A stretch of DNA of 64,000 bases from Haliotis cracherodii (taxonomy: Eukaryota), in assembly GCF_022045235.1 (NCBI RefSeq), contig NW_027266343.1, forward strand, positions 49,166,001 through 49,230,000. The letters run 5' to 3'. The position numbers were made by a program, and so were the translations under genes. Under the pieces are notes generated by a model. That model was given only the letters and a program-made list of their open reading frames with translations, searched no databases and was not told the DNA's origin. Below are positions 6,506 through 42,367 of this stretch, one piece after another (the stretch's first letter is position 1; each line of letters opens with the position of its first letter).

Positions 6506-6910
6506 TAGGGCTGGGACAGGTAACTCAGGTACCTGCGATGGATGGGTACTGAGTAGGACCCAGGTACCCACAGGACTACCCAGACCTGTTGTTAGTCACG
6601 TGATATATTGTTTAATGACAAAAATTATCTAAACCTATGGTTACACTACGTGTCACTAATGTTCACATTTCTTTCTGACTATGCACCCATTCCTTCTGAC
6701 TTTTATATGTTTGAATAAAACTGAAACTTCAATGTATGCATGACTAGATCGTTTTATACATGTATAATACATTTTGTCAGGGCTACGGTCAAACTATTTC
6801 CAATCGGACATTTTGTACCTATCTCTTGAGACCGACAGCGTGTACCCAGGTAGGGTTGGGTAATAGTGGATGGGTACCCGGGTAGTAAATTTGGATTCGT
6901 CCCAGCCCTA
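6506..6910. mobile_element. hAT-type MITE (TAGGGCTG...CAGCCCTA)
   Basis: TIR TAGGGCTGGGAC / GTCCCAGCCCTA and 8-bp TSD CATACTGT/CATACTAT. Inverted homolog of 41561-42367. Confidence 0.85.
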
Positions 6911-23760: not shown

Positions 23761-24166
23761 ACAGCAAATGTCAATGTTTTGACATAATGCAGTTTTGAGA
23801 CAGTATTTAGTTTGAAACAGAGAAACTAATAGTATGAGTTCGTAGTGATTATTACCAATACCAGAGCTATTAGATATCTATTTCCAATATCATAATTATG
23901 CCTTCTTAATTTGACCACAGGAATAAGTAGCTGACATTAACAATTAAAATGTTCAAAATGTGGAAAAAATTATGTTCAGCAACGTATTCCTGTGTTTTGA
24001 CACAGTGATTATTAATGTAGATGACTTATTTTAAAACAACAAATGTGAGAAAAGTGAGGATTGAAAATAGCAAAATTTTAGAAAAAATGTAACTAAAGTC
24101 AAAATAATACATGTAGATTTCTCTGTGTTTACAGGGCATGCAGAAATTGTTTCTGAATCAGATGAA

Positions 24167-24327
24167 TGAGAGAGTTGGAACTTTAGCTGCTTTTAGCAAT
24201 ATCCGAGCAATATCACAACAGGGAACACCAGAAATGGGCTTCACACAATATACCCATCTGGGAAATCGAACCGGGGCCTTTAGCATGAGGAACGGACACT
24301 TTAACCACGAGCCTACCCAACCACCCT
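24167..24327 (-). mobile_element. SINE family A
   Basis: Full body, with 13-bp TSD TGAATCAGATGAA. Confidence 0.88.
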
Positions 24328-41312: not shown

Positions 41313-41477
41313 GGGGCGGTCGGGTAGCCTAGTGGTTAAAGCGTTTGCTCGTCACGCCGAAGACACAGGTTCGATCCCTGACATTAGTACATTGTGTGAA
41401 GCCCATTTCTGGTGCCCCCCGCCGTGATATTGCTGGAATATTGCTAAAAGCGGCGTAAAACCATACTCACTCACTCA
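41313..41477 (+). mobile_element. SINE family A, full length
   Basis: A-box TAGCCTAGTGG, B-box GGTTCGATCCC, (ACTC)n tail and 14-bp TSD CTAAATAATTTATA. Confidence 0.95.
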
Positions 41478-41560
41478 CTAAATAATTTATAAATTTGCAT
41501 TTATATAAGTATTGTCTGTTAATGTTAAGCTTTATATAAAGATATGTTCATTGTTTCTAT

Positions 41561-42367
41561 TAAGGCTGGGACAAGTCTAAATTTACTACCCGGGTACCCG
41601 ACCCCCTATTACCCGACCCTACCCGGTACCCACTCAAGTTGGGTACAAAATGTTCCCTTGGGAATTTTTTTACAGGAGCCCTGGCAAAAAGTATTTAGAT
41701 ATAGTATGTAACGATCTGAAGTTGACTAAATCTTTGTCTTTACTCAAATGTAGCGGCCATAAAATTTCCGAGTCCCGTGATGGGATTCGAACCACGGACC
41801 TTCTGATCAGAGGTCGGACGCCTTGTCCACATGACCAAAGAGGTTAACCCCGTCAGCAAGCTGACAAGGTAAGGATGTCATCTGTGGGATGACTCCACGC
41901 CCTGCTACATACTCCCCCGTCAACAGAAGGCACGTCCCGGGCCGCATAGTAGGGTACTGAGGCTTATTTTGCTCAAATTTGATATGAACGTGCTCAGCCC
42001 CACGTTGGGCGCCAATGTAGCGGCCATAAAATTTCCGAGTCCCGTGATGGGATTCGAACCACGGACCTTCTGATCAGAGGTCGGACGCCTTGTCCACATG
42101 ACCAAAGAGGTTAACCCCGTCAGCAAGCTGACAAGGTAAGGATGTCATCTGTGGGATGACTCCACGCCCTGCTACATATAAAAATCAGAAGGAATGTGCA
42201 CTTAGTCAGAAAGAAATACGAACATTAGCGACTTGTACTTAACTCTAACCATAGAATATTATTGTTATTGCCATAAAAAATATATCACATGATAACCACG
42301 GGTGGGTTACCGGGTCCTATTCAGGACCTACCCGACCCGAGTACCTGAGCTACCCATCCCAGACCTA
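41561..42367. mobile_element. hAT-type MITE hosting a TRIM
   Basis: TAAGGCTGGGA...TCCCAGACCTA with perfect TSD GTTTCTAT. The flanks of the TRIM align with the uninterrupted copy at 6506-6910. Confidence 0.88.
41749..42176 (-). mobile_element. TRIM (miniature non-autonomous LTR retrotransposon) with tRNA-derived LTRs
   Basis: Two identical 161-bp LTRs (41749-41909 and 42016-42176) with TGTAGC...GCTACA termini and a 106-bp interior. Minus-strand PBS TGGCGCCCAACGTGGGGC (42014-41997, tRNA-Lys) and PPT ACGGGGGAGTA (41920-41910). Each LTR carries a tRNA-Arg-like A/B-box cassette. Confidence 0.95.

What the first reader, a model, noticed from the sequence alone, without database searches (positions are those of the whole stretch)
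41749..42176. Young miniature LTR retrotransposon whose LTRs are built around a tRNA-Arg gene (Pol III-driven TRIM)
Seen: two 161-bp LTRs identical by eye (TG...CA, 6-bp terminal inverted repeat), an 18-nt tRNA-Lys PBS one base from the 5' LTR, a PPT, and only 106 bp of non-coding interior. On the minus strand each LTR carries TGGTCATGTGG (A-box)-ACAAGGCG-TCCGA-CCTCTGA-TCAGA-AGGTC-CGTGGTTCGAATCCC (B-box). This is a decayed tRNA with TCT (Arg) in the anticodon position, preceded by two small hairpins (GTCATC/GATGAC and GTCAGCTTGCTGAC) and followed by a T4 tract just before the LTR end. Known: plant Cassandra TRIMs carry 5S rRNA in their LTRs. I recall that tRNA-bearing molluscan equivalents have been named Ajax, so the class may be described even if this family is not. 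Inference: the element uses one tRNA as promoter and a different tRNA as primer, borrows RT/integrase from a Lys-primed autonomous partner, and must read through the T4 terminator in its 5' LTR. Identical LTRs imply recent activity.
Basis: partly seen in the sequence, partly recalled or inferred. Interest (0 to 1): 0.85.

Follow-up and report, generated by a model that had tools for sequence, protein, structure and literature searches.

The report
Abalone mini-retrotransposon with tRNA-Arg-like LTRs
This is a real, very recently active 428-bp non-coding LTR retrotransposon of an abalone genome whose repeats carry a decayed tRNA-Arg-like promoter module. It is a new family of a class described in 2024 under the name Helenus, so it is a solid but not surprising find.

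Summary
There are two 161-bp LTRs that are 100% identical (TGTAGC...GCTACA), an 18-nt tRNA-Lys-CTT primer-binding site one base after the 5' LTR, a polypurine tract and a 106-bp interior. All lie on the minus strand.

The family is large and young. About 1,300 LTR cores and 450 interiors were counted. Several loci carry 100% identical copies, 24 of 27 sampled copies have perfect 4-bp target-site duplications, and tandem LTR-interior arrays occur. The window copy itself has no duplication.

The LTR module fails Rfam and ARAGORN tRNA detection. It nevertheless aligns without gaps to the genome's own tRNA-Arg-TCG (38/52, z=13) and equally well to a SINE head.

The class is published as Helenus (Kojima 2024). 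That paper lists molluscan Helenus only in pteriomorph bivalves, and this genome is an abalone.

One locus joins an LTR to a full retro-copied mature tRNA-Lys. A low-copy Ty3/Gypsy element shares the PBS and the 4-bp duplication, making it a candidate partner. Pol III transcription remains untested.

The scan had already reported an old copy of this family elsewhere in this genome (s1-831976).

The parts
42016..42176 (-). 5' LTR (161 bp), TGTAGC...GCTACA
   Evidence: 100% identical to 41749-41909; same unit in >40 scored genomic copies.
41997..42014 (-). Primer-binding site, 18 nt complementary to the 3' end (with CCA) of tRNA-Lys-CTT. One spacer base (42015) separates it from the LTR.
   Evidence: sequence; at locus L086 the same LTR end is followed by a complete reverse-complement tRNA-Lys-CTT.
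41910..42015 (-). Non-coding internal domain (106 bp)
   Evidence: 446 genomic matches to its 31-mer at up to 3 mismatches.
41910..41921 (-). Polypurine tract GACGGGGGAGTA abutting the 3' LTR
   Evidence: The same ...GGGGGAGTA end is seen in 12 published Helenus interiors.
41749..41909 (-). 3' LTR (161 bp)
42042..42110 (-). tRNA-Arg-like module in the 5' LTR (LTR 67-135). The same module lies at 41775-41843 in the 3' LTR.
   Evidence: gap-free alignment to the genome's own tRNA-Arg-TCG; 38/52 identical, z=13 against 1000 dinucleotide shuffles. Not detected by Rfam or ARAGORN. No cloverleaf forms.
42094..42104 (-). A-box-like TGGTCATGTGG (also at 41827-41837)
   Evidence: It matches TRG-Y and YGG of the Helenus box A but has T where the consensus has C (TRGCY).
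42050..42060 (-). B box GGTTCGAATCC, a perfect consensus (also at 41783-41793)
   Evidence: The spacing to the A box is the same as in the real tRNA-Arg gene, because the alignment has no gaps.
42028..42031 (-). T4 run, the only run of four or more T on the sense strand of the element, 12 nt before the LTR end (also at 41761-41764). Putative weak Pol III terminator and R/U5 boundary.
   Evidence: The genome's real tRNA-Arg gene is followed by T5. T runs at this position are seen in several published Helenus LTRs.
42119..42132 (-). Palindrome GTCAGCTTGCTGAC about 14 nt upstream of the tRNA-like module (also at 41852-41865)
   Evidence: By eye, published bivalve and nemertean Helenus LTRs have a palindrome (CTAGCC...GGCTAG) at the same place.
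42144..42160 (-). Hairpin GTCATC-CCACA-GATGAC in U3 (also at 41877-41893)
   Evidence: Function unknown.

Best explanation
The element is one copy of a high-copy, recently active family of terminal-repeat retrotransposons in miniature (TRIM) in an abalone (Haliotis) genome. It belongs to the class named Helenus / TRIMp3, meaning TRIMs whose LTRs contain a tRNA-derived A-box/B-box module.

Shown here: it has two LTRs, a tRNA-Lys-CTT PBS and a PPT, and no coding capacity. The family integrates with 4-bp target-site duplications, forms solo LTRs and tandem LTR-interior arrays, and has copies identical at different loci. tRNA-Lys really is joined to the LTR end in one aberrant cDNA relic.

Inferred mechanism: RNA polymerase III starts a few bases upstream of the A box (about LTR 62-66) in the 5' LTR. 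A fraction of transcripts read through the weak T4 run (LTR 146-149), continue through the PBS, interior, PPT and 3' U3, and terminate at the T4 run of the 3' LTR. That gives an RNA of about 350 nt with a terminal repeat R of about 85 nt and a U5 of 12 nt. The RNA is packaged and reverse-transcribed from tRNA-Lys, then integrated by the proteins of an autonomous Lys-primed Ty3/Gypsy element. The best candidate is a low-copy family at C1:41.11 Mb. It has the same 18-nt PBS plus the next three bases, a similar U3 terminus (TGTCGCAGG versus TGTAGCAGG) and the same 4-bp duplication.

The tRNA-like module does not encode a tRNA. It derives from tRNA-Arg-TCG, or from a SINE head descended from it, and serves only as a promoter.
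For: Structure.

Family size and youth: one search gave 1,781 first-look candidates, and the 40 scored were all 95-100% identical over full length. Searches counted 1,305 LTR cores and 446 interiors. In one search, 20 of 31 adjacent LTR pairs differ by 0-1 bases.

Transposition: perfect 4-bp TSDs in 24 of 27 copies. Tandem arrays are seen.

tRNA relationship: (z=13 to own tRNA-Arg-TCG; z=2.5 to the tRNA-Lys control). The anticodon position reads TCG in the older copies.

Primer: an LTR plus complete mature tRNA-Lys-CTT chimera at L086.

Partner: gag-PR-RT-RNaseH-IN order, PBS identity over 21 nt, a 4-bp TSD TACG/TACG and about 8 loci at 91-100% identity.

Class: Kojima 2024, PMC10886601. That paper reports animal Helenus with 4-bp TSDs, bivalve families using tRNA-Lys PBS, Gypsy partners, and lengths of 311-1263 bp.

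By direct reading, the LTR sense strand contains no TATA box and no AATAAA signal, which fits a Pol III unit rather than a Pol II unit.
Against: No transcript evidence was obtained. Three small-RNA libraries of a related label gave 0, 14 and 3 reads on both strands, and the contig run is of unknown molecule type.

The module is not recognised by the Rfam tRNA model even at E<=10 on 161 nt, nor by ARAGORN. It does not fold as a cloverleaf.

The A box deviates from TRGCY.

A T4 run only about 85 nt downstream of the presumed start should stop many Pol III transcripts.

The partner assignment rests on the PBS, a 9-nt terminus and the TSD length only. The inspected Gypsy copy has a broken reading frame.

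The window copy has no TSD.
Confidence: 0.8

Rival explanations
1. It is an ordinary Pol II-transcribed (or host read-through-transcribed) TRIM. The tRNA-Arg-like stretch is an inert relic of a SINE or tRNA-pseudogene insertion into an ancestral LTR and plays no part in expression.
For: There is no tRNA model hit. The module is as similar to a SINE head as to the tRNA. The A box is imperfect. The T4 run would abort Pol III early. No small RNA signal was found. Sequence variation among 96 copies is no lower in the A and B boxes than elsewhere, although post-insertion decay is expected to be neutral either way.
Against: The B box is perfect and the A-B spacing is tRNA-exact. The module is in the sense orientation, upstream of the PBS. 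The LTR has no TATA or AATAAA. The same layout (palindrome, A box, B box, T run near the LTR end) recurs in independent published Helenus families. The only T4 of the sense strand lies where an R/U5 boundary must lie.
Confidence: 0.17
2. The LTRs are functional tRNA-Arg gene copies that the element spreads, so it acts as a tRNA gene amplifier.
For: An Arg anticodon (TCG or TCT) sits at the right place, and a terminator-like T4 follows about 11 nt after the module.
Against: There is no acceptor stem, the T stem is broken, and position 33 is C rather than the universal U. ARAGORN and Rfam find nothing and no cloverleaf forms. The genome already has more than 400 matches to the real tRNA-Arg-TCG core in tandem arrays.
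Confidence: 0.02
3. It is a single local duplication or an assembly artefact, not a mobile element.
For: The window copy lacks a TSD.
Against: More than 1,300 LTRs lie on many chromosomes, with different 4-bp TSDs.
Confidence: 0.01

Closest known systems
Helenus (TRIMp3), Kojima 2024, Biology 13:119 (PMC10886601); bivalve families such as Helenus-1_PiIm, Helenus-2_ArIr and Helenus-1_PeMa
   Same: It is a TRIM with a tRNA-like A/B-box module in the sense orientation in each LTR. [quoted passage not shown] The size (161/106/428 bp) falls within the bivalve range, for example 160/105/425. Tandem arrays occur and a T run lies near the LTR end. By eye, Helenus-1_PiIm also has an Arg-like ...ATCAGAAGGTTGCGAGTTCGA segment and the CTCTTTGG motif before the A box.
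   Different: None of the distinctive 12-15-mers of this LTR or interior occurs in the 2024 consensus file, so it is a separate family. The host is a vetigastropod, whereas the paper lists molluscan Helenus only in pteriomorph bivalves. The module is more decayed than usual, with no tRNA-model hit.
[quoted passage not shown]
   Same: The same concept applies: a non-autonomous LTR element whose LTR carries an internal Pol III promoter. Tandem arrays are known for Cassandra.
   Different: Their promoter is 5S-derived (box A, IE, box C) and their TSDs are 5 bp. No 5S match was found here.
tRNA-Arg-headed molluscan SINEs (MESC superfamily; Matetovici et al. 2016, PMC4758252) and the SINE found here at L021:1013-1072 and L007:3020-3080
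   Same: They have a head derived from tRNA-Arg with A and B boxes. The LTR module matches the SINE head better than the tRNA in the acceptor/A-box part and in the variable-loop/T-stem part.
   Different: SINEs have no LTRs, PBS or PPT and are mobilised by LINEs. Similarity to the SINE stops at the end of the head.
biv-TRIM (Satovic et al. 2019, PMC6934838)
   Same: It is a miniature LTR element of molluscs.
   Different: biv-TRIM has no recognisable PBS, and that paper describes tRNA similarity only in the inner domain, not in the terminal repeats.

Membership tests
Helenus / TRIMp3 | Short (<1000 bp) non-autonomous element with two LTRs and no coding capacity | tested here: met
   428 bp in all: 161-bp identical LTRs and a 106-bp interior.
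Helenus / TRIMp3 | PBS next to the 5' LTR and PPT next to the 3' LTR | tested here: met
   An 18-nt complement of the tRNA-Lys-CTT 3' end lies one base after the LTR, and GACGGGGGAGTA lies before the 3' LTR. The LTR-tRNA-Lys chimera supports the primer identity.
Helenus / TRIMp3 | tRNA-derived sequence in the LTR with conserved box A (TRGCY...YGG) and box B (GGTTC) | tested here: met
   Gap-free alignment to the genome's own tRNA-Arg-TCG, z=13. GGTTCGAATCC is perfect and YGG is present. Box A reads TGGTC, with T in place of C. Caveat: Rfam and ARAGORN find no tRNA.
Helenus / TRIMp3 | 4-bp TSD (animal Helenus) | tested here: met
   24 of 27 sampled copies have perfect 4-bp TSDs. The window copy itself has none.
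Helenus / TRIMp3 | Transcription from the internal Pol III promoter | tested here: inconclusive
   Small-RNA runs gave 0, 14 and 3 reads. The contig run is of unknown molecule type. This is also unproven for Helenus in the literature.
A published Helenus family (2024 consensus set) | Sequence identity to a listed consensus | tested here: not met
   Six LTR or interior 12-15-mers are absent from DataS1. Only the generic PBS and PPT words match. Repbase and Dfam could not be searched.
Ajax / Cassandra | 5S rRNA-derived promoter in the LTR | tested here: not met
   No 5S rRNA match at E<=10 on the LTR. The module aligns to tRNA-Arg instead.
Functional tRNA-Arg gene | Cloverleaf recognised by tRNA models | tested here: not met

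The most novel reading that the evidence does not exclude
This would be the first Helenus lineage documented in a gastropod, and it is not an independent invention. Its LTR shares the layout of bivalve, brachiopod and nemertean Helenus LTRs: TGTAG terminus, a palindrome, GGG(A/T)-rich CYCTTTRG-YTCA box A, box B, a T run and a CTACA terminus. That would make Helenus one ancient lophotrochozoan TRIMp3 lineage that is still transposing in abalone. With a low-copy Gypsy partner and a genomic LTR-tRNA-Lys cDNA relic, the system could test directly whether Pol III can make the genomic RNA of an LTR retrotransposon.
Probability: 0.3. Interest if true: 0.5.

Novelty: new member of a known kind. Interest (0 to 1): 0.33.

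Why it matters
It adds a very young, abundant family to a class described only in 2024, and in a molluscan class where the describing paper lists none. About 1,300 LTRs carrying A and B boxes are potential TFIIIC or Pol III binding sites and tRNA look-alikes, which abalone genome annotation should mask. The identical copies at different loci suggest ongoing activity. That activity could provide insertion polymorphisms for population work in a species that other notes of this scan call the black abalone. The family offers a small, traceable template for the still untested idea that Pol III can produce the RNA of an LTR retrotransposon. None of this overturns current understanding.

Tried and rejected
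1. ARAGORN and Rfam (gathering-free, E<=10, on 2 kb and on the 161-nt LTR alone) found no tRNA in the LTR. The only tRNA-like hit nearby is an unrelated SINE at 41324-41382.

2. The RNA evidence is no test of expression. Three 2026 miRNA-Seq raw-read runs gave 0, 14 and 3 reads on both strands. One contig run of unknown kind covers the element but cannot show start, end or strand.

3. The first partner searches used the PBS with a TACA or CA LTR end. They returned only mutated TRIM copies, mostly CpG-decayed PBS. The partner candidate appeared only when the TRIM's own terminus was excluded.

4. I tested for lower variation in the A box, B box and T4 run among 96 LTR copies. There was no clear difference, and the test is uninformative because post-insertion decay is neutral.

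5. I considered whether the missing TSD of the window copy reflects recombination between elements at two loci. This is rejected, because both flanks are adjacent parts of one host repeat.

6. I considered whether the LTR-tRNA-Lys chimera is a recurrent product. It is not: one place in the genome.

No alignment against them was run.

8. Organism names of the sequencing runs are coded, so the seven labels that hold the element could not be named.

Full report
**Observation**

Window 41749-41909 and 42016-42176 are 161-bp direct repeats, 100% identical, beginning TGTAGC and ending GCTACA.

The element reads on the minus strand:
- 5' LTR at 42176..42016.
- One spacer base at 42015.
- An 18-nt primer-binding site, TGGCGCCCAACGTGGGGC, at 42014..41997.
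- A 106-nt interior without coding capacity.
- A polypurine tract, GACGGGGGAGTA, at 41921..41910.
- 3' LTR at 41909..41749.

On the sense strand, each LTR carries these features:
- Hairpin GTCATC/GATGAC at LTR 17-33.
- Palindrome GTCAGCTTGCTGAC at LTR 45-58.
- A-box-like TGGTCATGTGG at LTR 73-83.
- An anticodon-arm-like palindrome at LTR 92-108.
- A perfect B box, GGTTCGAATCC, at LTR 117-127.
- The only T4 run of the whole sense strand at LTR 146-149, 12 nt before the LTR end.

**A real, mobile, young family**

A search of the window's own assembly (1.18 Gb) gave 1,781 first-look candidates. The 40 that were scored were all full length at 95-100% identity, on many chromosomes.

Pattern counts gave 1,305 places for a 33-nt LTR core and 446 for a 31-nt interior word, both at up to 3 mismatches. 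The reversed control patterns gave no hits. LTRs therefore outnumber interiors about 2.9 to 1, which implies several hundred solo LTRs.

Tandem LTR-interior-LTR-interior arrays with up to four LTRs occur.

Of 27 independent full-length insertions, 24 have perfect 4-bp target-site duplications, all different from one another. At least four other loci carry copies 100% identical to the window copy, two of them with perfect TSDs. Of 31 adjacent LTR pairs, 9 are identical and 11 differ by one base. The family has clearly transposed very recently.

**The window copy is atypical in one respect**

Its flanks are caaa and tata, so it has no duplication. Both flanks are adjacent parts of one host repeat, which has a paralogue at window 6506-6910. 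Relative to that diverged paralogue there is no duplication and perhaps a 2-nt loss. It is therefore not a recombinant between elements at two loci. How it was inserted is unexplained.

**The tRNA-like module**

ARAGORN finds nothing. The Rfam tRNA model gives no hit even at E<=10 when only the 161-nt LTR is searched.

However, the genome's real tRNA-Arg-TCG gene aligns to LTR 67-135 without a gap. That gene was found through a pattern search, which uncovered tandem arrays with a 307-bp period. Local alignment gives 38 of 52 identical bases. The score is 24, against 7.7 +/- 1.2 for 1,000 dinucleotide shuffles (maximum 14; z=13). A tRNA-Lys control gives z=2.5.

The head of an abundant SINE of the same genome matches the LTR equally well (z=12-14). 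The SINE matches better in the acceptor/A-box part and the variable-loop/T-stem part. The tRNA matches better in the anticodon arm. Matetovici et al. 2016 reported tRNA-Arg-derived heads for molluscan MESC SINEs, including Haliotis.

Among 96 LTR copies, the third base of the 'anticodon' is T in 62 and G in 25. The G copies are older, with a median of 6 mismatches against 1.5.

The module cannot be a tRNA. It has no acceptor stem, a broken T stem and C at position 33. Its fold is no more stable than that of shuffled sequence.

**Primer and partner**

At locus L086 (C45:18009197), a 5'-truncated LTR ends in ...GCTACA-T. It continues into a complete reverse-complement tRNA-Lys-CTT that includes the post-transcriptional CCA. 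This is what one expects if DNA synthesis copied the whole primer tRNA. It is genomic evidence that tRNA-Lys is the primer actually used. Only one such place exists in the genome.

PBS-anchored patterns that excluded the TRIM terminus found one multi-copy non-TRIM family. The copy at C1:41110300-41118300 has these properties:
- It encodes gag(PNMA-like)-protease-RT-RNaseH-integrase in Ty3/Gypsy order, in five open pieces.
- Its LTR begins TGTCGCAGG (TRIM: TGTAGCAGG) and ends GTGACA.
- A TTA spacer follows, then the same 18-nt PBS plus the next three bases.
- A copy on C67 has a 4-bp TSD, TACG/TACG.
- About eight loci exist at 91-100% identity, including a 100%-identical tandem pair.

This is a plausible source of the proteins that mobilise the TRIM, but the link is circumstantial.

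**Mechanism**

Shown here: the structure, mobility, TSD length, primer identity, and the tRNA-Arg/SINE-head ancestry of the module.

Inferred: the A/B boxes drive Pol III from about LTR 62-66. Some transcripts read through the T4 run of the 5' LTR and stop at the T4 run of the 3' LTR. For comparison, the real tRNA-Arg gene uses T5. This would define an R of about 85 nt and a U5 of 12 nt.

The LTR has no TATA box and no AATAAA, which fits this model. The absence of other T4 runs in 267 nt is not statistically remarkable.

RNA data did not help. Three small-RNA libraries gave 0, 14 and 3 reads, and a contig run of unknown molecule type cannot show ends.

**Comparison with the literature**

Kojima (2024, PMC10886601) named TRIMs with tRNA-like LTR sequences Helenus. 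Those with a 5S promoter from nemerteans are Ajax, and together with Cassandra they form TRIMp3.

Animal Helenus make 4-bp TSDs. Bivalve families use tRNA-Lys among other primers. Gypsy elements are the proposed partners. Sizes such as 160/105/425 bp (LTR/interior/total) are listed.

None of the distinctive words of this LTR or interior occurs in the published consensus file, so this is a different family.

By eye, published lophotrochozoan Helenus LTRs share this element's layout: palindrome, CYCTTTRG-YTCA box A, box B, T run, CTACA end. Helenus-1_PiIm also has an Arg-like segment.

**Host**

The genome has Egg_lysin (PF01303) genes over the curated cut-off. Other agents of this scan call it black abalone.

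Kojima lists molluscan Helenus only in pteriomorph bivalves. His screen was seeded from Repbase, so gastropods were not excluded by test. Papers held in the library that mention Helenus do not report a gastropod family. Repbase and Dfam could not be checked.

The element's 31-mers occur in runs under seven coded organism labels.

**Earlier work in this scan**

An old copy of the same family was already followed up elsewhere in this genome, with the same conclusion (s1-831976). I reached the classification independently from the literature and the genome searches.

**Verdict**

This is a confirmed, well-characterised new family of a known class. The Pol III step is unproven. Interest is modest.

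Noticed in passing
L086:1371-1581 (G000:C45:~18009065-18009275): A 5'-truncated LTR of this family is followed by one T and a complete reverse-complement mature tRNA-Lys-CTT with CCA. It looks like an integrated cDNA in which synthesis copied the whole primer tRNA. It is unique in the genome.
   Followed up: partly
L031-L042 (G000:C1:30.24-30.28 Mb): A tandem array of tRNA-Arg-TCG genes with a 307-bp period. More than 100 units are listed, and the tRNA core pattern has 414 matches genome-wide. One unit reads TCA and is called tRNA-SeC by ARAGORN. Each gene is followed by a T5 run.
   Followed up: partly
window 41749-42176 flanks; paralogue at window 6506-6910: The TRIM sits inside a roughly 400-bp host repeat (41561-41748 plus 42177-42367). 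It has no target-site duplication, although both flanks are contiguous in the paralogue. The insertion route is non-canonical or unexplained.
   Followed up: partly
window 41313-41479 (also 19304-19470, 59383-59550, 24163-24326 and many loci): A very abundant SINE of about 168 bp whose head scores 26 bits on the Rfam tRNA model, just under the gathering score. It is unrelated to the TRIM.
   Followed up: no
L021:850-1095 (-), L007:3000-3245 (+), L015:2545-2790 (+): A second SINE family whose tRNA-Arg-like head resembles the TRIM LTR module (CCTCCGTGGTCTTGTGG...GAAGGTCCGGGGTTCGA). Its body is shared among the three copies. It may be the source lineage of the LTR promoter.
   Followed up: partly
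L088 (G000:C1:41110300-41118300) and C1:41118195-41124175: Two 100%-identical Ty3/Gypsy interiors lie in a tandem LTR-interior-LTR-interior arrangement. The LTRs contain their own 306-348-bp internal tandem duplications, so LTR length varies between copies (about 390 bp on C67 versus about 900-1000 bp on C1).
   Followed up: partly
G000:C7:25190671-25249396: Four exon-sized matches to the Egg_lysin family, grouped about 7-9 kb apart in two clusters some 50 kb apart (possibly lysin and sp18). They were used here only to place the genome among abalones.
   Followed up: no
L045:1367-2700 (G000:C2:~35549240-35550575): Two LTRs of the family lie in inverted orientation about 1 kb apart. The first is followed by the PBS and then by unrelated sequence. 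This is a rearranged or chimeric copy.
   Followed up: no
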